This document shows, piece by piece, positions 1,812 through 47,628 of a DNA stretch of 64,000 nucleotides. Source of the DNA: Rhodosorus marinus CCMP1338 (lineage: Eukaryota; Plantae; Rhodophyta); assembly GCA_029953675.1 (NCBI GenBank), contig JAMWBK010000004.1, positions 1,860,001-1,924,000 of the forward strand, in the 5' to 3' direction. The position numbers and the translations under genes are program-made. The notes under the pieces are model-generated. The model was not told the origin of the DNA. It worked only from the letters and a program-made list of their open reading frames with translations, and made no database searches. Position 1 is the first letter of the stretch. Each line of letters starts with the position of its first letter.

Positions 1812-3916
1812 GGTTCATTCAACGGTTCCAAGCGGCGGAACACCGCACCAACCACCACGAAAACAGCAACCGCCGTGGACGCTCAGAATCTCTTGCCTTG
1901 CAAGCTTCTTGAAAGCCGCCGGCGGTTTTCACACTACCCATCCACCCATGGCCGCAAAGGCCTAGAAGAATCATATTTCTTTTAGAGTTTTTTCTGCTCA
2001 GATCCTTTTTGGACAAGCCGATGAACAAGAAAGCAAAAGAGCGATACCAATTTTACTCACCCCCCTCAGCTTGTACTAAGACACGCTTTCGTAAACTCGG
2101 TCCGGAACTGTTCGGAACGAGCTGAGGGTGAAAGATGCGTTCTTGAACAGAGTAAGGATACATCTGGACAGCACCGCGAGATGCTGCCTACCATGCAGGA
2201 GGATCGAGTAGCGTTGAGCCTGAGCGAAGCACGACAGCGGGTACAACAAATTTTTTTTTGGGGTTTGACCGTGAATGGATTGTATGGATTGCATGAATTG
2301 TCTACAGACGAAAGCGCTCTCTCACCACAGTAGCGCTTGAGATTCAGCCATATCGAGAGGGTTGAAGGATCTCATTGAGTGTCCCAGGGAAGGGCTTCTC
2401 CTGGTACGACTGAGGGTTTGCATATTTGATATTGCGCGGAGTTAAATGGAGCTTCTAATCGAAGCAGAGCAGTGTACCGGGCGATGAAAGAAAAGTCCAC
2501 CAGAGAGTCTAGGACCACAAACTTGTATAGTCTGCGGGCGATGTATTGTCATGTTTCGCCCGCCTAGATAAAGACCCCTCACGAACAGAACCTAACTTCA
2601 AAGGATAACTGCAAGAGAACCAGCGCAGAACGGCTTAGCTTCTCACTAAGCAAACTGAACTTAGTCATATCGCACGTTTAGAAACGACAGACCAGAAAAC
2701 CCATACTCCAAGTAGCACAAACCGGCGCTGACTGTTTCATGTAGTTTGCTCACAAGCCAGTTCCAGAAATTTACTGCAAACTCGACATCCAGGTTACTAG
2801 TGTCCGAAGCTCATCAAAGCGCCGAGCAAACTGGCTGTACGACTCTCCCAAGTTCAAACACTAACCTGCACTCGCAGTGCTCTTATCAGGCTCGACGAGC
2901 AAACTGCCGCGGCTCTGCTCCTCAGCTCAATGATCGTCTGAGGTGTGTGCCCACCCCTATCTGTCAATACGTGTTCACCAGCCCCCACCAAGTCTGGCGG
3001 GTACAATAGTACTATTGATCACGATAATTCCAAATACTCATTATTTGGAACCTCTTTCCCAAACTTTGGCTCAAAAATGAATTAATATAATAAATTACGA
3101 TTCATTATGGAAGTATAGACTAAAACATAGCCAAACATCCACGCCGATTCGATGACCAAGCATGAAAGGTCAATACGAAATCTTATTTGTCAAAAAAAAA
3201 ACATAGATCAGGAAATCTCATCGAGCCTCAATAAATTGCACATACTTTACCATGCCTATAAATAACAACCATAACCACCCCCAATCGTCTATTTTATTAC
3301 AATAATCTCGTTTTATTGGATTTCATTGGAAGCCTCCTACCCCTCCCACATCAACGTCCCACATCAAAAATATCATTATACATAATAGTAAAAGCGTTTT
3401 AGCCGTCAGCACCATTGACAGTTAGACGCGACTTTCGCCATGAATTGCCGAAGAAAAAATTATATCCCAAACATCAATTCCTGTCCCAAAAACAAACTAC
3501 TCATAGAGGAAACGTACGAATGTTTTTTTAGGGGGGGGGGAGTACGCAAGCGTTCCAAAATCCAATATCAACTTCAATAACCCCCTATGATAATAACAAA
3601 AATTCTCAAATAATAAATAATACAATTAAAACAATTAGGAATTATGATTTTGTATGAATGGAAAGAGAGGGTTAGCATAATCTTATGTTCTATGTTGTAG
3701 GAGGGGGGAGGTTGATATGAGTTGATATGGTTTTAGATGGATAATGTAGTGTATTTTACTGTCTATGGAATGATATTAACGATGTAATTTGGTGTTCGCA
3801 TGTTGAGAGTGGATCGGCGTCTTCTGGTTTTTTTTTCTCTTGCTGGAAGATGAAGGCCACGTCTAGTCTGGTCGCGTTAGGGCGGACTTACTGCTTCAAT
3901 TAGTGAATTCGGCTTT

Positions 3917-4175
3917 GGGGGGAGGCGAGGGAGGGAGGGAGGGAGGGAGGAGGGGAGATTTGTATGGGTATGGGAGGGTAGAAGGAGCGGGTTAGCCATT
4001 GGTTAAGATTGTTTTTGAGCAGTGTTGTGAACTTGTGTCTTTTTTTTTTTTTTTGATGGGCTTGTTTGTGTTGTATATAGCTCTGTCGCAGCCTGTTGGA
4101 TGTTGGATGTAAGAACGTGCGATTGGTTTGGTGGGTGGGTGGGTGGGTGGGTTGGGGGGGGGGGGAAGGGGAGGG
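3917..4175 (+). repeat. G-rich tracts: (GGGA)n at about 3929-3947, (GGGT)n at about 4133-4152 and a G12 run; G-quadruplex-forming potential
   Basis: Read directly from the sequence, 40-300 nt upstream of the RING gene ATG at 4213. GTAAGA at about 4109 and TTCTAG at about 4203 suggest a 5' UTR intron. Confidence 0.7.
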
Positions 4176-4212
4176 AGGTGGTGTTTTCTTCCTTTTGTTC
4201 TAGTTGTAACTT

Positions 4213-5271
4213 ATGGCTGGGATAACTCATCGGAGTAGGATTCCGGTTGTGCCGGAGACTGAGGGAGGAAGGAGTCCCGAGGAAGACAGTGTTCCTGGAC
4301 CGGGACCTGGGCCTGGACCGGGAAGGGTTGGACCTGTGGAGGGCTCTGGAGGAGTTGACAGGAGGGAAGTAGGAGTTTCTAGGACCGTGCATGTGGTGAA
4401 TTTAAGGGGAAGAGTTGTTTTGGGAATGCTTTTGGGGTTCTTTGGGACTCTGGCGGTCGTTGGTTTGCTGGTTAATGGATATCGGTCATCTGTGCCTTAT
4501 GCTTCGTTCCTCGCGTTTTTCACACTTGCTTTGTTAACGAAATTGATCATTGGCGATCAGTCCCAGACCCATCGGAGGAATGGATATGTGCAGAGGCGCT
4601 ATATTGGAGGAATGGGAGGAGGCGGCAGACTAGTTGGTACAGAGAGGGTTCAGTATAGCCGCTTGAATCAGCGCCTTTCCCTTGTGGACCGCGACTTTGC
4701 GCCCGGAGATTATGACTTACTACTTGAGCTGGACAACAATAGCCAAAGATTTAGGACATTCCTTGAAGGAGCGTCAAAGGTGCGACCTGTTATCGCTTAA
4801 GACAGTAATCGAAACCCATTCTGAAAGTCTCCAAAATGTTCCATGATTTAGGATGTGGTTGACCGGTTGCCAAGCTACATATTTAAGCCCGAGCCGAACT
4901 CCCCTCCAAAGAGCTCAAATTCTTCGGCTGGTGATGTCAGCGTAACAAAAACAGGCTGCACAATCTGCTTGGAGGAGTTTTCCGCAGATCAGAATATTCG
5001 AATTCTTCCTTGTTTGCACCAATTTCACGTGGATTGCGTGGGTAAGGCTTCCGACCTTGATATTGGGTTGTTATGCAGTGTCATATTGTCCGGACGCAGC
5101 TCATCTTCTTGTTAATCTTTTTTCTCTTTGATTTTCAATCAATCAACAGACCGTTGGTTGTATCAACGTGCCAAATGCCCGGTGTGCAAGTTTATGATCG
5201 TTGACGTGGAAGAGGCCATACCGTCCTGGACGGAGACACAAACTGTATACGAGAATCCGAGGGAATGCTAA
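4213..5271 (+). CDS. Membrane-anchored RING-H2 E3 ubiquitin ligase, SDIR1-like (3 exons)
   Basis: Two hydrophobic helices (VVLGMLLGFFGTLAVVGLL, FLAFFTLALLTKLII), the motif RLSLVDRDFAPGDYDLLLELD, and spliced C3H2C3 CTICLEEF..LPCLHQFHVDCVDRWL..KCPVC. Stop at 5269-5271. Confidence 0.85.
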
Positions 5272-5842: not shown

Positions 5843-8800
5843 TCAGTACTGTCGACTTCTGGTTGTAGGAATGGCGCAAGGTTTCCTGAGCGAGCTAATG
5901 CTCATTCTGCTGCCGACTGATCGCACCGAACCTTTGTCACTCTCATCGTCCGCACAGTTCTGAGCAACAGATTTCGACGATGAAATCGTAGGTCTGGTTA
6001 ATCGTTCCAATCCCGAAATATTGATTTGCTGAGATGACCTTCTCCCTACTGGAGTTCCTTGACGGACTGACGACCGGTTAGCCAAACTGCTCAGTTTCTC
6101 CTGGTACAAATCTTCAGAACCCAAACCCCTACCGAACTGCTTCTGCACAACGTCACACGTGGGAACCGGTTGTTAGTTTCACGGGGGTAAGGACCAGCAA
6201 AAGAAAGCTGAGCGGTCTAACTGCTTACCGAAGCATGGCGCGGCCTTGGAATCGAAGACTTCGTCATAGCGTAGTTGGCGGTCATCACCGACGATGGGCG
6301 CGTTGACTTTGGCGGAGGAAGTTGAGGCTGCTCATCATTATCCACTCGATTCAGCTCCGCAAGGATGGATCTCGTTGGTTGGTGGAGGGGGGGACTTTGG
6401 CGGGTACTAGAAGAGTCGTTTCTGCCGCCTACTGCTTGCTCTGACATCGCTGCTCGTTCGAGTATTTCGATGCGCTTGTTCGCCTCGTTCAGCTGCTTCT
6501 GAAGCTTTGCATTCTGATCGGAGTACCTGGCGACGTCCTCACCCGCTTTTTCCGATTCTCTAAGTTGCCTAGTGAGAATATGAACCTCTTCCTCCAGGCC
6601 TTGCTGAATTTTCTGCGCCTTGAATTCAGCTTTGCTGGAAGCCTGTGCAGTCTGAGAGTTCGCAAGTTGGAGTTGCTGCTCCAGTTTCGCGCTGTGATTC
6701 AAAATAGCCTGCTTCTCCTTCGTCAATTCGGCTAACTGTGTAAGCATCTTCCTTGATTTCGAAGAATCAAGATTCTGTCGAGCAGCTCCGAGCTCAGCTT
6801 TCGAAACGCGGGAGGCAAAGTTGAGACTTGAGAGCGTTTCAGAGCCATCGCTATCGGATGGACTGATGTTTACGAACATAAGCGTCTTCGCATCTCCCCC
6901 GAGCGCCGGCTGCAACAAGTAGGTTAACTTCGAATTCCGGAACGGGATGTGAGAATTATTCGACAGTATCGACGAGAAGACATCTCCAAGAGCGGAAAGT
7001 GACTTGTTAATGTGCTGGGCCTCTTTGAGACGATCCCCCGTGGCGTTTGTTCTCGACAACCGTTCAGATCCGGCCAGATCAACCTAAATTGTCAGTTCCA
7101 GAACACATCACAGCGTACGGAGAAGGCAGGACGGTACTTGAGTTCGGGATGATGTGGATAGTCCTCCAATGAGCAGATTCTGCTTCCAGTGCTATTGAAT
7201 TTGACTCACCATGTACATTTTTGCTTCAACTCGATCCCCATTCAACAAGTTCGTTCTCGTCACGTTGATGATTACGACGAGATGGCTTCGACTCGAATGT
7301 TCGTTCATGCATGTAGCTCCTGAAGACCTGTTCCGGGAACCAATCGCCATGACCTCCCAGACCTCATTTACGCTGTGGACTTCAATGCACCTCAAATTTG
7401 ACACGAAATTCTCGTTGGAGCCTTTCTTGATCTCCAGCTTGGGTCCGCTCGTGTTCAACAAGTCGTGCAGATTTTCATTGTATATTTCCAGCATCGATAT
7501 TGAAATAGATGTTTCAAACCGATCGGAGGCCTCTCGTGACGTCTGAAACAGTTCCTCCAGTGCTCGATGGTTGATTCCCATCTGCCCTCTCTCTCCGTTC
7601 ATGGTGTAGGTCTTCCCAGACCCCGTTTGTCCGTACGCGAAGATGCAGACGTTGTATCCATCCAATACCGAAGTAACAAGCGGTGAGATGTCGTCATAGA
7701 CAGCCTCTTGACTGTCCTCAGGACCGTAGACTCGATCGAACTCGTAGGTCTTTCCACCATCGATGGTGATAACTTGCGGCACACTTCCGTCTGATCTCTT
7801 CATGGTATCTTCTCGATCAGGAAAATCAACAATACAGGACTCAAAGGAATCTCTCGGTGGTCTGCAGCGACAGAATACACGGACATTCCCCCGCAGCTCC
7901 TGCAGCTGATTGAAAAGCTTTCTTCTCTGCTGAAGCTCAGTCCACCACTTCTCCCGGGCGTCTTCCAGTTGCTTTTCAAGCGCGTCCATCTTCTCGCGTA
8001 TTTTTATATCAAGCTCCGGCGTGGTCATGGTAAGCTCCTGGCTGAGGCCGTCAGGGGAGCAGGTCTTCTCATCAAAACTTTCGTCGAGGTGATGTTCCAT
8101 CTCTGCCGACAGTGACAATCCGTCATCCCCATCGCTCGCCGCCAAGCCCTTCCTAGGATCCGGCGTCTTCAGAACAGCGGGCGCTTGCTCCACGTTAACC
8201 TCCTCCTCTCCATAGGTTCCGCTCCGACGCTTCAGCTCGGATTCAAATACAATCTCTCTACTCTGCTCATCCACGAGGAGATATCTGTAATCCGAAAGGG
8301 CCGTATTCGTCGTTAAGAACTCCAGATACCAGTCACCAGTAAACCCTTTAACCTCGTCGACTACTCTTGACATCCGTAAGGCCCGCTCCGTGTTCCATTC
8401 GCCGAGAGGTTCACTAGCTCCACTGAAGTATATTGTCTGAGCACTGCTGCTGAAAAAGTGGTGCCTGAAGCTGAATCTTTTTATGGGATGGTCTACCACT
8501 TGACGATCAAATACTCTTTCGGCAAAGTGCTGGTCCCTTAGGTACTTCATGGATTCCTCTCCGTGGCATATTTGTGGAGAAGGAAACAATCGAGCTTCGT
8601 TCTTTGACTGCCAATCGAGGTTTGCACTGTCAGGAAAGAGCCACCCTCTTTGGAGGTCTCGATTCTCGACAAAGGCTTTCTTGACTTGCATGGAACAGTT
8701 CCCAAGGTCTGCACCATGTCTGAGGAAGAAACTGATCACGTTTCCAGTTGGCATGTCAGATATTTCAAAAACGAATACTCCATTACTGGTGAAGTTGCAG

Positions 8801-9033
8801 TCCTTGACCCTGGTCAAAAACGTCGACCCTCTGTCTCCAACTAGCTGAACGTAGACGTGTACTTCCTTGCCATGCCACGCCACATCTCCCGTTTTCACTG
8901 TTATTCGATAAGCTTGCTTTCGGTTGCGGGGTTTTAGCGACGCTTTCAGCGAGGAAGACGTCGATGCAGATGAAAAAGAAAACGATTCCCTCGTCATAAT
9001 AGGAGTAAAAACCTCAGCCATCTGTCCAGTCAT
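5843..9033 (-). CDS. Kinesin-14 motor with N-terminal PLAT/LH2 and CBM20 (starch-binding) domains (3 exons)
   Basis: PLAT: [24 protein letters not shown] (about 8910-8585). CBM20: [39 protein letters not shown] (about 8484-8210). Kinesin-14 neck [20 protein letters not shown]-loop GQTGSGKT, switch I NEHSSRSH, switch II DLAGSER (after intron 7209-7084), [10 protein letters not shown], then a C-terminal coiled coil and S/R-rich tail. Confidence 0.92.
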
Positions 9034-9982
9034 CTTGAGCTCTATCCGTGAACCCCCCACCCCAATCACCGCCACGTCCACAACTGAGTCAGAACAGACA
9101 AGAACCACCCGTGGTCTAATCTCTGGTTTCTCAATCTACGCCAAGTTCCATTTCCACAAAGTTTCGATTTCTCTTCCTGTTCAATCCCTTCAAGATCAAA
9201 GAGAAGGGATCCTACATGAGCATAAAGATGCAGACAATTGACTTGCAAACTATCACCACCACCATTCAGCAATAGAAACCCTATTGCCGCCCATGACGAA
9301 TGAAAAATGGAAGAAAAGGATCAACGCGGTATCCTGCGAAATCTCGAGTCTTAATTTTCATAATAATTTTAGTATTTTCGGGTATGCTTCAGGGTGAAAA
9401 TCGTTCTCGGCGTTAAGATTTTGAATATTTAAATTTGATCGGGTTTGAAATTTTTCGAGCAAAAAGGCTTAGCGGGGGTTTCGATAGGAGAGGACTTGAG
9501 GCTTTTGCTCGCAACGCGAAAGTAGAGGCTTTCGAATTATCTGTCACGGTTTTGAGTGGTTTGATTGTTCATTTTGATGGACTATATACTTCTGCGCAGG
9601 TGTATTTATGTTGCGAAGATGATCGAAGTTGTGCTCAGTTGATAGGGGCCATTCAGTGTCAGGATCGCCAGTGCTATCTTCCGGGTAGTCCAACGAACAC
9701 GGTACGTCCTTCCTTCTGTGGTATCGACAGATTTATAGTTAGCAACTCGCCGACTTGTGTAGTGGTGAGCGGCAATGCTGCGATGATGCCGCTCCTGAGG
9801 AGAAATGTAAACGTTTGGACGCGTATGTCCCTTAGGCGTATGCCACGATCGCACTTCCCATGCGCATCTTCTCGTCAGCAAGAGGTACGGTGTCGCGCAG
9901 TCAGGGAAGGGCAATCAGGCAGCCTGATTGGGAGAAGCATTAGCCCACGTCTCCCGAATCCCTTCGCCCTCGAACCGAGAAA

Positions 9983-10575
9983 TTGTCAATTGAACAAAGC
10001 TGCGATGGTCTCCGAAGCTCAAAGGCTTCGAAAAAATGTGAGTTCGGGGTGCCTTCGGTAAATTATTTAGGACGCATACTGCAGAATGGTACTCGGAGAC
10101 CGGATCCTGAAAAGGTAGAAGCTACCGCTCGATGGAAACTGCCAACAAGCCCGACGGAGGTGAAGAGTTTTCTGGGTTTCTGCAACTTCGTTCGTGAGTG
10201 CATTGCTGACCAGTCTCGAGATGCGGTCTCTTTTGACCTAGCTAACAAAGCTTGGGAAGTGGCCATGGACCCCAGGTGGGCAAGGCAGCTTTTGATCGGC
10301 TGAAAGCTGCCGTCACTGAACTGTACCTGCCAGACCTTGGGCTCTCGTTTGTGGTCACCAGCGATGCCAGCATAGCGAGTGCGAGCTGTTTTCTAGAAGA
10401 AGCGCAGAGGTCAGGAGGTACCGGTCGAGTTTTTCTCCAGGAAGTTTCACGACACTGGTACATCCTATACCTCCCCGGTTTAGTCGCGGTCGTCGTCTTA
10501 GCGGTCGCTCATTGGCACGTGTACCTGGAGGGGCGGAACTTCTTGGTGCGGACCCCCCCGATCACCATCCGGTAA
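9983..10575 (+). mobile_element. Degenerate Ty3/gypsy LTR-retrotransposon pol fragment (RT C-terminus, connection, RNase H)
   Basis: KCEFGVPSVNYLGRIL..PDPEKVEA..W..P..EVKSFLGFCNF; AFDRLKAAV..PD..SFVVTSDAS; LAVAHWHVYLEGRNFLVRT. Frameshifted and interrupted. Confidence 0.8.
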
Positions 10576-11333: not shown

Positions 11334-13051
11334 TCAGTCTTCGTCGCCATCGTTATCGCCCAAATCGCTTGAATCTCCTGCTTCCCTTGCCGCTTGGGCA
11401 TTGGCTATCCTTCGCTCAGTTCGCTTTACCACATGGGAGGGCAAGCGGGCCTTGAAATGGTTGAAAATGTCCGCTTCGCCCACCACACCAAAATCTATTA
11501 CTTTAAGGCTCCCAAGCGAGCCGCCTACACTTGCAAGCAACGGATGGTCCATGTCGGCACTGAGATGGACGTCAAAAATTGCCCCGCATCGTAAGCCTCT
11601 TCGCGAGGAGACCTCAACTGGCCGATCTTGCTGAATGTCGAATACCTAAGAGTCACAGGAGAGGTCTCAGCAGCTGAACGGAAAAGGAGTCCACTTCCAA
11701 CTGTACCGGACAACGCATCCGGCGTGCTACGAACCTTCAGCGTCTTGTCCACTGAACCAACGACGAGCAGACCGTCCACATTCGCTGAGAGCGAGCAAGC
11801 GGAGGCGGCGCCCTTGAAAGCCTTCAAGCTCCAAACCGGAGAGGACCCGCTTCCACCTTTGCGCATGTCAAACTGGCTGATGAAACCATCCTCCGTGGTG
11901 GCTAAGTAACTGCTCGTTGGAGCTCCCGTCCGATTTATCCACAGTGCCTTCTCAGCGTCTCCATTAAGAGAAAACCTTGAGGACACGTCTCCAGATCGAA
12001 CATCAACTGTCTGCACAGTTTTGTCGAAGGACGCGCTCAACAACAGGGATTCCTCTGTTGGATGCCAACTGACGGCTTGAACCTTATCCGAATGATGTGC
12101 GAGGGTTTGCACGCACGATCCGCTCTCGACGTCCCACAGTTTGACTGTGTTATCGGCGGCGCCACTTGCGAGATACTCGTTCTGCACTGGATTCCAGGAT
12201 ACGCTCATGACCTACAAACAAGCGCAGAATTTAGTTACGAGGTCAGTTGATCAGACCCTTGATGGGCGTACCTCTCCAGTGTGACTGTCTGGGACAATCT
12301 TTGGAGCCTTCTTCTTCTTCTTTTTGTTGCTCGTTGAGACTTTGCCCCTTTCCACATAGTGACCTCCAAGAGAAACAAGCGGCTCTAAAGAATCCACATC
12401 ATTCAAATCCCATATGTCGATACCATACAAAAAGGATCCAACCGCTGCAAGGTTTCCCCGAGTGTACCCGAGTGTAGGATGATAACTGCTCCAAGCTACA
12501 CAGAGCGGGAATGCAGGAAGAACAGTTTCGTGATGGAGGTAGAGGTTGGGCTCGTCGTCATCGACATCTTCATATATGTATACCTCCATTTGCGAGATAT
12601 CTTCACCCGCACGAAGCGCAACGAGGGGCATGTCGGTATCCCTACAGAGTACGGATCGAAAATTAACTGGAAAAGTCAATAAATTCCTGATCATCGATTG
12701 CCAGAACCATATTTCAAGACCAGAAACGCCAGCTAACCTGTAAGTCATATCGTCGAGCTCATCTTCGTCATAGACTTCGTCCTTGTCCTTAATATACGGG
12801 TCATCACGGTTGCTCTTGTGAAACTTCAATCCATCCAGATCATCCGCCAGAACATCTGCAATCTCCACCTTCTCACTCTCCTCGTCTGGCTCTTCATCCA
12901 TTTGAACTGCCTCTGAAGCCTGGTCTGCTTCGGCGGCTTCGGCAGCTTCGGCAGCTTCGGCGGCTTCGACGGCTTCGACGGCTTCGACGGCTTCCTCTTG
13001 AAGCTTCGTCTTTGAAACTCCCTTCGGAATCCATGCTGAAGCACACAGCAT
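11334..13051 (-). CDS. PWP1: Periodic tryptophan protein 1 (WD40 ribosome biogenesis factor)
   Basis: N-terminal MLCASAWIPKG, acidic linker, LYLHHETVLPAFPLCVAW, GNLAAVGS..IDIWDL, LASGAADNTVKLWD, HHSDKVQAVSWHP..LLSASFD. Confidence 0.92.
12927..12994 (-). repeat. Coding 9-bp tandem repeat encoding (EAV)3(EAA)4 in PWP1
   Basis: gcttcggcg/gcttcggca/gcttcgacg units read directly. Confidence 0.85.
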
Positions 13052-13902
13052 CTTGCAAAACAACTAGGCTCGCAGGTGTTGACCCCTTAAGCCTCCTCCG
13101 TCACCTCGGGAAGTGCCAACTCAGACCACCCACAAATATAACAAAAACGGCCCACTTTGACTAAAAGAACCACGGACTAGCGAACAGCTGTTCTGCTCTT
13201 AATCCAGATACATCACGAATTCCACAGTCACAGGAGACAATAGACAAAACATTCCTCAAGGCAGCTTCCTTCCCAGGGCTCATATATACCCTTCACCATC
13301 CGCATGAAATCCCGATCGTCGTCAAGGAAATTTCTGTTCGGCCATGATAGCACGAAACATTGAAAAAACGAAAACTTTTGTTGGCCAATGAATTCTGGCT
13401 GATGATACCTGTATTCAGTCAATCATGAAAAATGGAATTGTTTTAGGGGTTTGGTTCAACTGAGGATTCTGAGGGAAGAATGGCAGTGGTACCTAACGTA
13501 GTTGAAGGAACCTAACTGTGTCAGATACTAACTGTATCAGAGACATTTTCATCATTGCTGGCCCCCTGCATCACAAGATAAAGCTGGGCAAACAGACAGA
13601 GCTATCCCTATCCAGAAAATGAGAGCACAGAATAAGTGCTAAGGTGCGTTTCTGGGGTTGTTCCAGTGGACGTGGACGAGACGGTATTCTCGATGAGCAA
13701 CGACCCTGTAGCCTCCCCTCACAAGCTGAAAAACCATAGCGCGTCAGTGCGCTGCAGCTGGAAGCCAGCTCTGATTGTGTCATAGCGCTTTCAGATCGAT
13801 CTCGCTGACATGCTTCCATACCCCGTTGAGGGAACTTCTGTTCACGTCCAACTCTTGTCCCGCGTTTGTTCTTCGTCTTACTTCATATTTTAATTCTTCA
13901 GT

Positions 13903-42892: not shown

Positions 42893-45800
42893 TTAGTCCT
42901 CCCAAGCCTGGTCGGGGTCAGACATGTCGGGGGCAGAGAAGTTGCCTCCGTCTGGTGAGCTCAGAGGTACGTCCTCCATTTCTGGGTTCACTAGACCGCT
43001 AGCATCTCCTTCCAGAGGTGCGACACCGTCCTCCGCGTCTCCCTTCAAGTCCGGGTCGCTTTGTTCCAGACTTGCAGCGGCTGCCCCTGAGGTTGGAGTC
43101 TGATCAACATCATCCATGGCGGATGCTCCATCCCTGGCTTCGCCTAATTGGCCCATTTCGCTATCAGACCCAAGTCCGTCTACTACATTGTCTTCAGTAA
43201 ACTCCTCTCCACTTTCATCGTCGTTCATCCGGAGATCCGGTTCGTCCTCTCCTGCTCCCTCAATCTCGTCGATTTCTTCTTCAATCTGTTCATCATCAAC
43301 GTCGCCATCCTCAATTTGTGCACCGGCAATATCTTCTGCAATATCTACACCACCTACTTCCTCCTCAACGATCTGTTCATCGTCAATTCCGTCATCAGCG
43401 CTCTGTTCAATGTCCATTCCATCCTGGTTGATCGACTCTTCGCCGGCGAGCAGCTCGTTGATACTTTCCTGTGCATCTCCTTCATCATTCTCGTTGTCAT
43501 TCTCATCGGCTTCATATTCAGATCCTTCTCCGTCCTGGTTCTCGCCGGCAACCGCTTTCTCGGCTAGTTGCAAATCAGTTCCACTGGCGTCCATCTCCTC
43601 TCCGATCTGCTCGCTCCCGGAGCCCACTTCTTCGTCCGCAAACTCTCCCGTCTCCATTTCGTCAACCTCACCACCAGCGCTATTACTGTCAAGTTCTTTG
43701 ACCACGGGTTCGTCTACGTCATCCTCTCCGACAACGTTCTCATCTTCCAGCTCAATCTCCTCCTCTAGCTCGATCTCCTCAACATCTTCTTCAGCGTCCA
43801 TATCCTCTTGGTCTTCGTCAGGCGCTTCTTCATCTTCGTCTTCGTCCTGCTCATCCTCGTCTTCCTCAGCAACCTCCTCCACCTCTTCAACTTCTTCGAC
43901 CTCCTCAACTTCCTCAACTTCGCCTGGCTCTGATTCACTCTCTCCGTCTTCCGCTTGCTTCTCTGCAATCTCTCCTTCTTCTGCATCGCCAGCTGAGCGT
44001 TGCTTTCTGGAAATTCCGCTCGCAAAGAAAGCAGGGCTCTCGGCCTTGTCTCCCAGGAACGGCTTCTTCGAGGCTGGGTCCAAATCCGAGTCCTCCGCGC
44101 TCAGGTCGGCCCCAACAGACACCTGAGATTTGGATAGAGTCTCCGGCCTCGATCTCTTTAGAGATTTCGACCCCGAGAAGTCTCCCCCTTCAACGTCGTT
44201 GTCTGAGTTTGACACCGGAACTGACCCATTACCATCTTCTGCTACTTCGCCATCACTCTCGACGAGCGTCTTCGTTTTCTTCAACCCCTTCTTGCGGCCA
44301 TTGTCATCAGTCTTCTGCTCGATGGTCTTGTCTTCGTCCTCTTCGGCAGCATCACCACCCTCGAGCCTCCGCAAGTACTGGGCATCAGTTAACCTGCAAG
44401 GTGTAGAGAACTCGTCACTCAACCACGTTGAACTTCCGACAACACGGAGGTCCGCTTGAACCTTTTCCGGACGATTGCATACCTATCAATATCGTACAAG
44501 TGCTTCTTCGCTGCTGCACGCCTAGGACCGAGCTCCTCAAGAACCTGATCTGCGCTAAATTGATCAGGTTTTCTGATCAGGTCAGGGTCAATATCAGTGA
44601 GCCAGTCCGGCAGCTCTTCTGCTTCCATCAAGCTTGATTGATTGTTGATCTCGATTTTTCTCTCGTCATCCACCTGCTTGAACACTTCGATTTCATGCTC
44701 TCCTCGGGACAGTATCTGGTTCAGTTCCTCTGGAGTGGGAAGCTCTTCTTTATCCTGGTCTTCACCATCGTCCTGCTCGCGCAGCAGATCCCGCAACCGA
44801 GCTTGCCTCTCGGAGTCCTGGAGAGCTCACTTGTGTTAGGACCGAAACTAATTCACTGTAGCGCTGTTCACGCACAGTTTACCTTGGACTTCTCGTCAAA
44901 CATTCCAGCCTCGACAATCTTCTGCTCGAGCCCACGCTTATAGTTTGCCCTGTCCAGGACGTTTTGCTCCACAGAGTTTGCAGTTATGAACCTCAGAATT
45001 CGTACTTCGCGTTGCTGTCCTATTCGATGCGCTCGGTCTGCTGCCTGGAGGTCAGCTTGAGGATTCCAATCGCTGTCGAAAATGATGACGGTGTCTGCGG
45101 TTTGCAGGTTAACACCCAGACCGCCGGCGCGGGTCGTAAGCAAGAACACATGATACTTTGTTTCTGGACCGTTAAACTCCTTGACAAGCGCGCTTCTTTC
45201 TTCCGGCTTCGTGTTTCCATCGAGTCTCAAGAAAGGAATGTCGCGATACCGCAATAAGCGCTCCTGCGGGGCCAAGAGCAACGTGAGGTGTGAGTTCTTT
45301 AGGGAGAGCGTCCTAAGGTTCACCGCTCGCAACATGTTCCAGTGGAATACCAACCTGTAAGTCCACGACTTTGACCATCTGGTTGAACACGAGGACTCGG
45401 TGGTCGGTCTTAAGAAGCTTGAGAATGCATGCGTCTAGCATATTGAACTTTCCGGAAGATCGCCAGAGCTCGGGGCCGTCGTCCACATTATACGAATACT
45501 CCACGTGAAACAGGTACGGATGATTCACAATCTTCCTCATTTGCATGGCGGGGTTCGACAACTTATCATAGCAAGTCTTCCCCTGCTCGTTCGTAAACAG
45601 CACTCGTTCCTGCTTCACAATACGAGCATAAGTGTGCTGCTGCCAAGCGGACATGTCGCAGAGGATGATATCCTCTTGTTTGGTAGGTAACTGCTCTCCC
45701 ATTTTCAAAACGTCCGATTTCAACCGCCGTAGCACGAAAGGCTGAAGTACTTGGTGGAGACGACGGATGATGAGAAGAGACTCCTCCTCGGATAAAATCT

Positions 45801-47628
45801 GGTTTGATTGCTGCTCCCCTTCCGGCATGTTCTCGAAGGGAGCCGAAAACCAAGTTTCAAAAGTATCACAACTCTTAAACACTTTTGGAAGAAGGAAGTT
45901 CAGAAGAGCCCATAATTCGCCCAGAGAGTTCTGCAGGGGTGTTCCAGTCAAAAGAAGCCGGTTTCTGCTCGTGTACTGCTGCGCTAGGATCGTGCTCAAC
46001 TTAGACTCATGATTCTTAATACGGTGCCCCTCATCTATAATAATATACTGCCAGCTGATCTGGCCCAGTGAGCCCTTTCCACGCAGGACGTACTCGAAGG
46101 TTGCCAAGCAAACGTTCACGGTGTTCTTCTGCAAATGGTTCTCGTAGAGAGTGCGCCGATGCTTCTTGTCTCCTGCATACACAATGTACTGAAGCTTTGG
46201 TGCCCATCTATCAAATTCAGATTCCCAGTTGTTCATCGTGGAAAGCGGGACTATGATTAGATACGGCCCAGGATTCTGCTTCTTCTCCACAAGATGACAT
46301 ATCAACGCAATGGTCTGCACGGTCTTGCCTAGACCCATCTCGTCAGCAAGAATGCCGTTCAGGCGATTGTTGTAGAGGGAAACCATCCACTGAAGCCCCT
46401 CCCGCTGATATTGTTTGAGTGTTCCAAATTCCAAGATCGTTGGCTGGTCTGTGACCGTTTCCGCCCTCGCGTGTGCGATTTCTTTGTACTTCCTGCTATC
46501 GTCATCCATCTCATCTTCATCCACTGCATCCCCACTCTCAAGTCGTTCATCTTTAAGCGTTTTGCTGAGCTCTTTCAGATACGAGTCAGTCTGACTCAGA
46601 ACCTCTAACAATCTTGCGTTCTTCGTTTCTCGTACTAACTCCAAGTAGCCCTCCTCGTCATTCTCCCTAAGCATTTGGATACGTTTCTTCTCCGCTTCCC
46701 GCTCCGCACGATCGGCAATTCTGGCAACATCGTCATGGTGCTTCATTACTCCACGGTTTACGTTCCTGATTTGTCGCCGGGTAGAGTCCCTATACCTCGT
46801 GAAGCCAGTAATGTGATTGTTCAGCGCATTAATCCACTTAGCCTTCGCATGCCTTCTCTCAGCCTCCTCTTGCTCGAGAAGCTTCGTTCGTGTTCGGTCC
46901 ACCCGTTCCAACTCCCTTTGAAGCGTTCGAAGTGCCCTTTCTCTGTTTCGACTACCGAACCTCCCGTCCCTGTCCGCCAGGGCATGCTCGGTGTGTATCC
47001 TTGCGCGGAGGGCGCGTTGCTTGCTAAGCATATCCACAGAAATGTGTTCCAGGAGAGGTGTTGAATTGGATTTCGGATCACGACCTCTGCTTGCGTAGTC
47101 CTCCAACATGTTCTGTCTCTCCTCTAGAAGAAGCGATGAATCGATGGCAGTGGGTTTCCATTGGGAAGGATCTGGCCTACGAACGGGTATCCGCGCATCC
47201 GCGGGTAGGAGGAAGGGGTTCTCTTGGGCTCCCGTAGTGCCTTGGTCTTTTGCTCCAGGCCTTTCAGCTTTGACATGCCGGGGCTTTCCAATTGTTAACC
47301 CCAGTTCCATTGCCTCAACGAGCTTCTGCGGCATGGGTTGTCTGGCCTTAAGAATCTGATAGATAATCATCTGAAGCTTGATAGCGTGGGCCTGAGCAAA
47401 CGTAAGATTTGACCCCGGAACAGGTCGCGTATGCGCTCGAAGAAGTCGAAGGAGGGTCCGAAATCGAGGATCCTGTAGTGCCCTTTTGTCACCCCATCGA
47501 GCTCGAAGTTCCTTGATTAGGGCCAAAATGTTCATTATCTGCATCCCTTTCAGCGGTATCCGTCTCCGAGCAGCCACCCTGCCGCTGGGACCTCCGGTTT
47601 TCGGAGCACCCACGCGTTCCGCGTTCAT
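42893..47628 (-). CDS. SNF2: SNF2/BRM/SMARCA2-4-type SWI/SNF ATPase (QLQ-HSA-ATPase-SnAC) with a long acidic tail and no bromodomain; 5' exon uncertain
   Basis: [26 protein letters not shown]; [22 protein letters not shown]; [67 protein letters not shown]; Sn[19 protein letters not shown]; [11 protein letters not shown] after intron 44482-44394. Confidence 0.93.
43871..43922 (-). repeat. Coding 9-bp repeat (EVE/EEV)n in the SNF2 acidic tail
   Basis: Translates as [17 protein letters not shown]. Confidence 0.8.

What the first reader, a model, noticed from the sequence alone, without database searches (positions are those of the whole stretch)
5843..9033. PLAT-CBM20-kinesin-14: candidate motor linking starch granules, membranes and microtubules
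Seen: one uninterrupted exon (9033-7210) encodes a PLAT/LH2 domain, a CBM20 module, a coiled coil and the kinesin-14 neck and motor, so the fusion is not a splicing artefact. All catalytic motor motifs are intact. In CBM20 site 1 (A. niger glucoamylase W543/K578/W590), W is kept (LGEWN), K becomes R (YRY) and W becomes F (IVFES). Established: CBM20 binds alpha-glucan granules; PLAT domains bind membranes, lipids or proteins; kinesin-14s are minus-end-directed; red algae store floridean starch in the cytosol; land plants have a different sugar-binding (malectin) kinesin-14. I do not recall a described CBM20-kinesin, but could not search. Inference: a motor or tether that positions cytosolic starch granules, for example around the plastid or nucleus or at division, and couples them to membranes.
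Basis: partly seen in the sequence, partly recalled or inferred. Interest (0 to 1): 0.88.

Follow-up and report, generated by a model that had tools for sequence, protein, structure and literature searches.

The report
Red-algal starch-binding-domain kinesin-14 paralogue
This Rhodosorus marinus gene really does encode a microtubule motor (kinesin-14) carrying a lipid/protein-binding PLAT domain and a starch-binding CBM20 domain; it is a shortened, diverged copy of a motor family found in all sampled red-algal classes, which nobody appears to have studied and which could move or partition the starch granules that red algae keep in the cytosol.

Summary
Window 9033-5843 (minus strand) is a three-exon gene. 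Its 992-aa product is identical to NCBI 'hypothetical protein NDN08_002338' of the red alga Rhodosorus marinus. Exon 1 (9033-7210) encodes PLAT, CBM20, an acidic spacer, the neck coil and the motor up to just before switch II.

Domain support:
- CBM20 passes Pfam's threshold and its predicted fold matches CBM20 structures.
- PLAT fails Pfam's threshold (13 vs 23 bits). It is supported by an exhaustive HMMER search, a family profile and a confident AlphaFold model.

The gene is not unique. PLAT-CBM20-kinesin-14 is found in every sampled red-algal class (Galdieria, Cyanidium, Porphyridium, Rhodosorus, Agarophyton). One database entry labels it automatically, and the PLAT/LH2 part was tabulated for Cyanidioschyzon merolae in 2006. 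I found no functional study.

The window gene belongs to a short Stylonematophyceae-specific paralogue clade. This clade has lost the family's conserved tail motifs and its basic linker motif.

Starch-granule transport or partitioning is plausible but untested. I rate it a new variant of a known kind, with moderately high interest.

The parts
7210..9033 (-). CDS exon 1 (aa 1-608): N-terminal Ser-rich stretch, PLAT, linker, CBM20, acidic spacer, neck coiled coil, and the motor up to just before switch II
   Evidence: spliced product identical to P0001
7084..7209 (-). Intron 1 (126 nt, GT..AG, phase 0), immediately before V609 of VDLAGSE. The orthologue locus L005 has an intron at the same position
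6229..7083 (-). CDS exon 2 (aa 609-893): switch II, rest of the motor, C-terminal coiled coil, start of the basic tail
6143..6228 (-). Intron 2 (86 nt, GT..AG, phase 0)
   Evidence: exon 3 validated by the conserved motif
5843..6142 (-). CDS exon 3 (aa 894-992 plus stop): Ser/Arg-rich basic tail containing the clade-specific motif [11 protein letters not shown]
8569..8916 (-). PLAT/LH2 beta-sandwich domain (aa ~40-155), diverged
   Evidence: Pfam 13 bits, below cut-off; phmmer hits to PLAT-repeat proteins at E to 2e-18; family profile hits polycystin-1 PLAT at 1e-12; AF2 plus Foldseek
8479..8568 (-). PLAT-CBM20 linker with a predicted helix (aa 156-185). The basic RRxS cluster found in most full-length canonical members scanned is absent here
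8209..8478 (-). CBM20 starch-binding-type domain (aa ~186-275)
   Evidence: Pfam 25.5 bits, cut-off 23.3; AF2 pLDDT 87.4; top 15 Foldseek hits are all CBM20 domains
8395..8397 (-). W213 codon, equivalent to glucoamylase W543 (site 1), retained
8284..8286 (-). R250 codon, equivalent to glucoamylase K578 (site 1), K to R
8245..8247 (-). F263 codon, equivalent to glucoamylase W590 (site 1), W to F
8017..8208 (-). Acidic spacer, probably disordered (aa 276-339, pI 4.1)
   Evidence: (pLDDT falls below 50 from aa 274)
7888..8016 (-). Neck coiled coil ending in the kinesin-14 'RGNVRV' junction (aa 340-382)
   Evidence: aligns to the Ncd neck; Microtub_bd 1e-46; composition run
6793..7887 (-). Kinesin motor domain (aa 383-705, interrupted by intron 1). 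P-loop at 7609-7632, switch II at 7063-7080
6427..6792 (-). C-terminal coiled-coil-like region (aa 706-827)
   Evidence: weak coiled-coil family hits; composition runs
5846..6426 (-). Basic Ser/Pro-rich tail (aa 828-992, pI 10.9, net +13; includes intron 2). Lacks the canonical YAFGSR and RPAQRV motifs

Best explanation
Shown: the gene encodes an internal-motor kinesin-14 with a complete set of catalytic motifs. Its N-terminal tail is a compact PLAT-CBM20 tandem. It belongs to a short, Stylonematophyceae-specific paralogue clade within a PLAT-CBM20-kinesin-14 family found in all sampled red-algal classes.

Inferred mechanism: two chains pair through the neck coiled coil and the post-motor coiled coil. 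The motor heads walk towards microtubule minus ends, that is, towards the spindle poles or nucleus-associated organising centres. The paired PLAT-CBM20 modules provide several weak contacts to the surface of a cytosolic alpha-glucan (floridean starch) granule. These contacts would use CBM20 site 1 (W213, R250, F263). The PLAT domain may add a contact to an adjacent membrane or protein. The motor would then gather, hold or partition starch granules along microtubules, most plausibly at cell division. The basic Ser-rich C-terminal tail may be a second, nucleotide-independent microtubule contact or a regulatory region.

This copy has lost the family's conserved tail motifs and linker RRxS cluster, and it has conservative changes in site 1. 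It has probably taken over part of the ancestral job, or a modified one, alongside the canonical copy NDN08_005066.
For: Kinesin-14 identity:
- Best solved-structure matches are Ncd, KIFC3, KCBP and Kar3, and the alignment starts in the neck helix.
- Pfam Microtub_bd and Kinesin both match.
- All motor motifs are intact.

CBM20:
- Pfam score is above threshold.
- The AF2 model has pLDDT 87.4.
- Its 15 best PDB fold matches are all CBM20 domains: glucoamylases, GPCPD1, laforin, CGTase.
- Site 1 is W/R/F, against W/K/W in glucoamylase.
- Site 1 is fully W-K-W in Galdieria, Cyanidium and the canonical Rhodosorus copy, so glucan binding is the likely ancestral property.

PLAT: supported. The two-domain model has pTM 0.84, suggesting a fixed tandem.

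Conservation:
- The architecture is present in all 32 family members tested.
- The motor tree mirrors red-algal classes.
- Between two Rhodosorus strains, PLAT (90.5%) and CBM20 (85.6%) are more conserved than the linkers (~77%).

Context: red algae, including C. merolae, keep starch granules in the cytosol, and C. merolae organelles segregate on spindle microtubules (PMC8504449). C. merolae has only five kinesins, and one of them is an LH2-bearing internal-motor kinesin-14 (PMC1434745).
Against: - No experiment exists for any family member.
- Site 2 is largely lost here: Y556 to V228, and Y527 to S197 in the HMMER alignment.
- Site 1 has two substitutions.
- In the Florideophyceae-like clade, K578 is T/Q and no Trp aligns at the W590 position. 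The family can therefore persist without a canonical site 1.
- PLAT here is diverged enough to fail Pfam. The canonical 'AGTD' of the PLAT signature motif reads 'HGKE' here.
- The short clade has lost the conserved tail motifs, so it may have changed function.
- The best-studied relatives with a sugar-binding tail, the plant malectin kinesins, localise to the nucleus, spindle and phragmoplast. They have no demonstrated carbohydrate cargo (PMC7094084).
Confidence: 0.42

Rival explanations
1. A cell-division kinesin-14 (spindle, pole or cytokinesis function) in which the PLAT-CBM20 module only localises or regulates the motor. For example, it could dock the motor on a membrane such as the nuclear envelope, or sense glucan or energy status. 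It would not haul granules.
For: - C. merolae keeps an LH2-bearing internal-motor kinesin-14 among only five kinesins.
- Plant malectin-domain kinesins, with similar motors, localise to the spindle and phragmoplast.
- CBM20 also occurs in regulatory or non-transport proteins such as laforin and GPCPD1, which are among the fold matches.
Against: The CBM20 site-1 triad is fully conserved in the early-branching unicellular lineages, which argues for real glucan contact. A division role and granule partitioning are not mutually exclusive.
Confidence: 0.3
2. In this short paralogue the CBM20 (and PLAT) no longer bind glucan or membrane. They have been re-used as protein-interaction or structural modules (neofunctionalisation), while starch-related work, if any, is done by the canonical copy NDN08_005066.
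For: - K to R and W to F in site 1, and site 2 lost.
- PLAT falls below the Pfam threshold, whereas the canonical copy scores 46.6 bits.
- The clade has lost the YAFGSR and RPAQRV tail motifs and the linker RRxS cluster, and has gained its own tail motifs.
- The clade sits on a long stem branch.
Against: - The substitutions are conservative: an aromatic is kept at both stacking positions and a basic residue at the third.
- The short-clade member P0003 keeps W-K-Y.
- The folded N-terminal domains are better conserved between strains than the linkers.
- Both domains are predicted to fold confidently.
Confidence: 0.2
3. A static tether rather than a transporter. The protein would cross-link starch granules, a membrane and microtubules, in the manner of STBD1 anchoring glycogen to membranes, with the motor acting mainly as a microtubule anchor.
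For: - A possible membrane module (PLAT) and a glucan module (CBM20) sit in a rigid tandem.
- The basic tail could give a second microtubule contact.
- STBD1 CBM20 is among the sequence matches of the family profile.
Against: All ATPase and switch motifs are intact and strongly conserved (95.7% between strains). A pure anchor would not need this.
Confidence: 0.06
4. The fusion is an assembly or annotation artefact.
For: None found.
Against: - PLAT, CBM20 and two-thirds of the motor lie in one uninterrupted ORF.
- An independent transcript carries the same fusion.
- The same architecture occurs in more than 30 proteins from independent genomes, transcriptomes and metagenomes.
Confidence: 0.01

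Closest known systems
Canonical red-algal PLAT-CBM20-kinesin-14 family. Examples: Rhodosorus marinus NDN08_005066; Porphyridium purpureum KAA8492972.1, labelled 'KIN-14S'; Galdieria partita GJQ13818.1; Cyanidium caldarium KAK4537423.1; probably C. merolae CMT097C
   Same: Same domain order: PLAT, linker, CBM20, coiled coil, kinesin-14 motor, coiled coil, tail. Same motor clade (support 100/98). The N-module aligns as one unit.
   Different: - The window protein is much shorter (992 aa, against 986-1671 aa and mostly about 1200-1670 aa in canonical members).
- Its stalk before the motor is only about 45 aa.
- It lacks the conserved C-terminal YAFGSR and RPAQRV motifs and the linker RRxS cluster.
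- Site 1 is W-R-F rather than W-K-W.
- Its PLAT is diverged (13 bits, against 37-62 bits in five of six canonical members scanned).
- It has an intron before switch II that is shared only with its short-clade orthologue.
Land-plant malectin-domain kinesins (MDKIN1/MDKIN2; labelled KIN-14E/R, 'di-glucose binding protein with kinesin motor domain')
   Same: Internal-motor kinesin-14 with an N-terminal carbohydrate-binding-type domain. These were the highest-scoring non-red-algal kinesins for the family profile. They grouped next to the red-algal clade in a tree with limited sampling.
   Different: The sugar-binding-type domain is malectin (PF11721), not CBM20, and there is no PLAT. MDKIN2 localises to the nucleus, spindle and phragmoplast (PMC7094084). 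The sister relationship was not tested against other kinesin-14 subfamilies.
STBD1 (starch-binding domain-containing protein 1) and laforin
   Same: A CBM20 is used inside the cytosol to attach a non-hydrolase protein to a storage glucan. STBD1 combines this with a membrane anchor, as PLAT plus CBM20 might. Both appear among the sequence or fold matches.
   Different: Neither has a motor domain. The membrane anchor of STBD1 is a hydrophobic segment, not PLAT (own knowledge). There is no homology outside the CBM20.
Ncd / KIFC3 / KCBP / Kar3 (solved kinesin-14 motors)
   Same: The neck coiled coil joins the motor through the conserved GN junction, and the catalytic motifs are shared. These are the best PDB sequence matches.
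   Different: Those motors are C-terminal, whereas here the motor is internal and followed by about 290 aa. Their tails bind microtubules or other partners and contain no PLAT or CBM20.

Membership tests
Kinesin-14 | Complete kinesin ATPase motifs (P-loop, switch I, switch II) | tested here: met
   GQTGSGKT 468-475, SSRSH 580-584, DLAGSE 610-615. Pfam Kinesin 1e-60 and 3e-31 on the two exon pieces.
Kinesin-14 | Neck coiled coil N-terminal to the motor, joined by the conserved GN junction | tested here: met
   '[15 protein letters not shown]' aligns to the Ncd neck and motor start. Pfam Microtub_bd 1e-46.
Kinesin-14 | Closest relatives are kinesin-14s | tested here: met
   Top PDB matches are Ncd, KIFC3, KCBP and Kar3, ahead of kinesin-1 and kinesin-5. 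The closest named proteins in the database are KIN-14 types.
Kinesin-14 | Minus-end-directed motility | not testable with these tools
   Needs a gliding or single-molecule assay.
CBM20 (starch-binding domain) | Sequence match to PF00686 above the curated threshold | tested here: met
   25.5 bits against a 23.3 cut-off, E=1.1e-5. The family profile hits A. niger glucoamylase SBD 1ac0 at 1.6e-7.
CBM20 (starch-binding domain) | CBM20 beta-sandwich fold | tested here: met
   AF2 pLDDT 87.4. The top 15 Foldseek PDB hits are all CBM20 domains, TM 0.53-0.69.
CBM20 (starch-binding domain) | Binding site 1 (glucoamylase W543, K578, W590) | tested here: inconclusive
   W213 is kept, K changes to R250 and W changes to F263. 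These are conservative changes, and their effect on binding is unknown.
CBM20 (starch-binding domain) | Binding site 2 (glucoamylase Y527, Y556, W563) | tested here: not met
   Only W235 (=W563) is kept. Y556 becomes V228. Y527 becomes S197 in the HMMER alignment, or F194 in a gapped MAFFT alignment.
CBM20 (starch-binding domain) | Binds alpha-glucan or starch | not testable with these tools
   Needs a pull-down or ITC with the recombinant domain.
PLAT/LH2 | Sequence match to PF01477 above the curated threshold | tested here: not met
   13 bits against a 23 cut-off, E=0.17.
PLAT/LH2 | Significant homology to bona fide PLAT domains | tested here: met
   phmmer against 1.84 billion proteins hits PLAT-repeat proteins at E=2e-18 and weaker, and these were confirmed as PLAT by Pfam. 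Five of six canonical relatives scanned score 37-62 bits for PLAT; Cyanidium scores 20.6, below cut-off. The family profile hits polycystin-1 PLAT at 1e-12.
PLAT/LH2 | PLAT beta-sandwich fold | tested here: met
   AF2 pLDDT 85.6. The top 50 Foldseek hits are PLAT domains of lipoxygenases and lipases, rmsd 2.2-2.8 A over about 115 columns.
PLAT/LH2 | Membrane, lipid or partner binding | not testable with these tools
   One lead only. W53 aligns to the position of the engineered membrane-insertion residues of Stable-5-LOX (alignment; the identity of those residues is from my own knowledge).
Canonical red-algal PLAT-CBM20-kinesin-14 | PLAT-CBM20-coil-motor-coil architecture and membership of the red-algal motor clade | tested here: met
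Canonical red-algal PLAT-CBM20-kinesin-14 | Conserved C-terminal motifs (K/R)IxYAFGSR and RPAQRV, and the basic RRxS cluster in the PLAT-CBM20 linker | tested here: not met
   Absent from the window protein and from all short-clade members. Each motif is present in most, not all, canonical members.
Malectin-domain kinesin (MDKIN) | N-terminal malectin domain (PF11721) | tested here: not met
   No malectin hit. The N-terminus is PLAT plus CBM20.

The most novel reading that the evidence does not exclude
Red algae, which store starch in the cytosol, use a dedicated CBM20-bearing minus-end motor to carry or partition starch granules on microtubules. This would be the first known motor whose cargo adaptor binds a storage polysaccharide directly. 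The red-algal CBM20 kinesins and the green-lineage malectin kinesins would then descend from one ancestral glucan-binding kinesin-14 of Archaeplastida, with the sugar module exchanged after starch moved into the plastid in the green lineage.
Probability: 0.15. Interest if true: 0.85.

Novelty: new variant of a known kind. Interest (0 to 1): 0.6.

Why it matters
How cytosolic storage granules are positioned and shared between daughter cells is essentially unknown. This applies to floridean starch, and by extension to glycogen and other non-membrane-bound stores. A motor with a built-in starch-binding module makes the question directly testable. The family is present in all sampled red-algal classes, and C. 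merolae, a genetically tractable red alga with only five kinesins, lists an LH2-bearing internal-motor kinesin-14 that is probably a member. The family also offers a natural comparison with plant malectin kinesins, whose sugar-binding-type domain still has no known ligand. The window gene adds a case of duplication followed by remodelling of the cargo-binding tail and the C-terminal tail.

Tried and rejected
- The word-based homologue search with the N-terminal region found only the gene itself and its strain variant. The exhaustive HMMER search was needed to find the family.
- NCBIfam gave nothing, as expected for a eukaryotic protein.
- Single-sequence PDB searches of the N-module and of the CBM20 piece gave only weak hits (E 0.2-0.4). 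They were useful for residue mapping, not as proof.
- Six literature searches found no functional description: CBM20+kinesin; starch-binding domain+kinesin-14; red algae+kinesin+floridean starch; kinesin+starch binding domain+PLAT; CMT097C; floridean starch+microtubule.
- I tried to name the organism of the PLAT-less CBM20-kinesin P0123. It has no relatives, and its only source is an unnamed JGI transcript.
- I tried to name the organisms of P0030 and P0115. They come from unnamed metagenome contigs.
- I wanted dN/dS between the Rhodosorus strains, but no DNA is on record for P0002. I used per-domain protein identity instead.
- The artefact explanation was rejected.
- A direct sister relationship to malectin kinesins is only tentative. 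The tree contained no KCBP, ATK, KAC or animal kinesin-14 sequences.
Full report
**What is in the sequence**

On the minus strand, an ORF runs from 9108 to 7192, and its first ATG is at 9033. The ORF ends at a consensus donor (ACATG|GTGAGT). A 126-nt intron (7209-7084) ends in TTTAG. The next exon opens with GTT GAT CTG GCC GGA TCT GAA CGG, which is VDLAGSER, the kinesin switch II. A second GT..AG intron (6228-6143) leads to a last exon ending at the stop codon 5845-5843.

The spliced product is 992 aa and is letter-for-letter identical to NCBI 'hypothetical protein NDN08_002338' of Rhodosorus marinus. Rhodosorus marinus is a unicellular red alga of the class Stylonematophyceae.

A transcript-derived protein from another R. 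marinus strain (P0002, about 88% identical) covers M5 to S893 without a break, including the exon 1/exon 2 junction. The domain fusion is therefore transcribed and intron 1 is spliced as modelled. That transcript diverges after S893, so it does not support exon 3. Exon 3 instead carries a motif, [11 protein letters not shown], that is conserved in the orthologues from Purpureofilum apyrenoidigerum and an unnamed JGI sample.

That exon stops at residue 608, so switch II and the last third of the motor lie in exon 2.

**Domains**

Pfam gives these scores on the exon pieces:
- Kinesin: 1e-60 and 3e-31.
- Microtub_bd, the kinesin-14 neck and motor start: 1e-46.
- CBM_20: 25.5 bits, against a curated cut-off of 23.3.
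- PLAT: only 13 bits, against a cut-off of 23.

*Motor.* The best solved-structure matches are Ncd, KIFC3, KCBP and Kar3, and the alignment starts in the neck helix. The P-loop, switch I, switch II and the RGNVRV neck junction are all intact.

*PLAT.* Three independent lines rescue this assignment.
- A phmmer search of aa 36-300 against 1.84 billion representative proteins gave 83 hits. Most were multi-PLAT repeat proteins, with E-values down to 2e-18. Three of them were checked and confirmed as PLAT arrays.
- A profile of the family's N-terminal module hits the PLAT domains of polycystin-1 (1e-12) and coral lipoxygenase (1e-10). It also hits the A. niger glucoamylase starch-binding domain (1.6e-7).
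- An AlphaFold2 model of aa 36-290, built on a 19-sequence family alignment, is confident (pLDDT 85.6, pTM 0.84). Its 50 best PDB fold matches are all PLAT domains of lipoxygenases and pancreatic or lipoprotein lipases, at rmsd 2.2-2.8 A over about 115 columns.

*CBM20.* Modelled alone, this domain has pLDDT 87.4. Its 15 best fold matches are all CBM20 domains: fungal glucoamylases, human GPCPD1, laforin, a maltotetraose-forming amylase, CGTases and the A. niger SBD.

**Binding-site residues**

The HMMER pairwise alignment to 1ac0 (chain index plus 508 gives glucoamylase numbering) gives this mapping:

| Site | Glucoamylase residue | Window residue |
|---|---|---|
| 1 | W543 | W213 |
| 1 | K578 | R250 |
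| 1 | W590 | F263 |
| 1 | N595 | K268 |
| 2 | W563 | W235 |
| 2 | Y556 | V228 |
| 2 | Y527 | S197 (F194 in a gapped MAFFT alignment) |

Across the family:
- Site 1 is the full W-K-W in Galdieria, Cyanidium, two Cyanidium-like metagenomic sequences and the canonical Rhodosorus paralogue.
- It is F-K-W in Porphyridium.
- It is W-K-Y or W-R-F in the short clade.
- In the Florideophyceae-like clade, K is replaced by T or Q and the W590 position has no aromatic residue.

**The gene is one member of a family found in all sampled red-algal classes**

Ten further 50%-identity clusters from the exhaustive search carry PLAT, CBM20 and a kinesin-14 motor. A profile search raised this to more than 30 clusters at 90% identity.

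Named members:
- Galdieria partita and G. sulphuraria
- Cyanidium caldarium
- Porphyridium purpureum (labelled 'KIN-14S')
- Agarophyton chilense
- Chondrus crispus (an N-terminally short gene model)
- Purpureofilum apyrenoidigerum (a 5'-truncated transcript)
- a second R. marinus gene, NDN08_005066 (1395 aa)

One JGI entry is already machine-named 'Kinesin motor domain/Starch binding domain/PLAT/LH2 domain'.

Richardson et al. 2006 list C. merolae CMT097C as a 1160-aa internal-motor kinesin-14 with coiled coil and LH2, one of only five kinesins in that alga (PMC1434745). They do not mention a starch-binding domain. I could not check that sequence directly.

No paper in the searchable library describes a CBM20-kinesin or gives any functional data.

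**Place of the window gene in the family**

I built a maximum-likelihood tree of motor domains.
- All red-algal PLAT-CBM20 kinesins form one clade (UFBoot/SH-aLRT 100/98).
- Its branching follows red-algal classes. Cyanidiophyceae come first, then Porphyridium plus Rhodosorus, then a large clade containing the Florideophyceae.
- The window protein sits in a strongly supported five-member 'short' clade (100/99) with its strain variant, Purpureofilum, P0120 and P0003.
- That clade is sister to the canonical Rhodosorus copy (91/84).

The duplication therefore probably happened within or near Stylonematophyceae.

The short clade differs from canonical members in several ways:
- It has only about 45 aa of coiled coil before the motor, against several hundred residues.
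- It lacks the C-terminal motifs (K/R)IxYAFGSR and RPAQRV, each found in most (not all) canonical members.
- It lacks the basic RRxS cluster (for example AGRRASRRASRRLS) in the PLAT-CBM20 linker.
- It has its own tail motifs: [18 protein letters not shown] and L(E/Q)RLTRPTISS.
- It has an intron immediately before VDLAGSE that is also present in the P0003 locus. Two canonical genes on metagenome contigs are single uninterrupted ORFs.

Between the two Rhodosorus strains, identity by region is: PLAT 90.5%, CBM20 85.6%, motor 95.7%, and linkers and tail about 77%. This is modest evidence that the folded N-terminal domains are under constraint.

The last 165 aa are basic (pI 10.9, net +13), Ser/Thr-rich and Pro-rich.

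**Relation to plant kinesins**

The highest-scoring non-red-algal proteins for the family profile are land-plant malectin-domain kinesins and KIN-14S types. With KCH-type kinesins as outgroup, the red-algal clade sits next to a group made of Mesostigma, KIN-14S, malectin kinesins and one probably glaucophyte sequence. The tree held no other kinesin-14 subfamilies, so this is a lead and not a tested sister relationship. Arabidopsis MDKIN2 is nuclear in interphase, and on the spindle and phragmoplast midzone in division (PMC7094084).

**Mechanism**

Shown:
- an intact kinesin-14 motor with its neck;
- a compact PLAT-CBM20 tandem at the N-terminus;
- conservation of this tandem across all sampled red-algal classes;
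- an intact glucoamylase-type site 1 in the early-branching lineages, with a conservatively changed one here.

Established background: CBM20 binds alpha-glucans. PLAT domains bind membranes or protein partners. Kinesin-14s move to minus ends. Red algae keep starch granules in the cytosol, and in C. merolae the organelles are segregated by spindle microtubules (PMC8504449).

Inferred: a dimeric motor whose paired PLAT-CBM20 modules hold a starch granule, perhaps together with an adjacent membrane, and draw or hold it towards microtubule minus ends. This would most plausibly ensure positioning or partition at division. I give this about 0.4.

Rivals:
- A division kinesin in which the module only localises or regulates the motor (about 0.3).
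- Loss of glucan binding in this particular paralogue (about 0.2).
- A static tether (about 0.06).

These overlap, and binding assays plus localisation would separate them.

**Verdict**

The functional idea is reasonable but untested. It is weakened for this copy by the loss of site 2 and by divergence of the PLAT and the tail.

The gene is not a singleton discovery. It is a remodelled paralogue of an uncharacterised red-algal family already visible in databases. The family as a whole is the interesting object, and its canonical members, or the probable orthologue in C. merolae, are the better experimental entry points.

**Context in the window**

This is ordinary nuclear DNA:
- a RING-finger gene downstream (4855-5115, plus strand)
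- a retroelement remnant upstream (about 9435-10575)
- a WD40 gene (11525-13063, minus strand)
- an SNF2-family helicase (45313-47628, minus strand)

Noticed in passing
L001:49-3426 (JGI sample 3300016906, contig Ga0186579_100370): P0123 is an 1125-aa protein with CBM20 (47 bits, aa 59-139) and a kinesin-14 motor but no PLAT. It falls outside the red-algal clade in the motor tree and has no detectable relatives of its N-terminal part. It may be an independent CBM20-kinesin fusion in an unidentified eukaryote.
   Followed up: partly
Canonical family members, PLAT-CBM20 linker (e.g. P0094 aa 186-197; equivalent to window aa ~156-185, 8479-8568): Most full-length canonical members scanned (15 of 19) carry a basic cluster of RRxS motifs (AGRRASRRASRRLS) between PLAT and CBM20. 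This looks like a basophilic-kinase phosphorylation site or a basic helix. It is absent from the window protein and its short-clade relatives.
   Followed up: partly
L005:4411-4476 and window 7084-7209: The orthologue locus from SRR22824290 has an intron at exactly the same place as window intron 1 (phase 0, before VDLAGSE). Gene callers there split the gene into two 'genes'. Canonical members on two metagenome contigs are intronless.
   Followed up: yes
window 6143-6228 (intron 2) versus P0002 C-terminus: The transcript-derived protein of the other Rhodosorus strain diverges right after S893 and ends about 16 aa later. This looks like retention of intron 2 or an alternative 3' end in that transcript.
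   Followed up: no
window 9435-10575 (+): Overlapping ORFs in different frames with retrotransposon-like sequence lie directly upstream of the kinesin gene. RT_RNaseH_2 scores 26.3 bits, just under its cut-off. This is probably a decayed LTR-retroelement fragment.
   Followed up: partly
window 4213-5115 (+): Two adjacent ORFs. The second has a RING-H2 finger (zf-RING_11, 1.4e-11) that is cut off at the ORF end. This is probably one gene with introns, convergent with the 3' end of the kinesin gene.
   Followed up: partly
window 2500-4500: G+C drops to 0.38-0.43 around 2500-4000. This is followed by a strong positive GC skew (+0.50) and a negative AT skew at 3500-4500. It was not examined.
   Followed up: no
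window 11525-13063 (-) and 45313-47628 (-): A WD40-repeat gene (two ORFs, probably split by an intron) and an SNF2-family helicase (SNF2-rel_dom 1e-96). These are ordinary nuclear genes.
   Followed up: partly
window 8875-8877 (W53) in the PLAT beta1-beta2 loop: The aromatic residue in 'TGDVAWHG' is conserved as W or F in most family members. It aligns to the position where Stable-5-lipoxygenase carries its engineered replacements of membrane-insertion residues (the identity of those residues is from my own knowledge). This is a lead for membrane binding by the PLAT domain.
   Followed up: no
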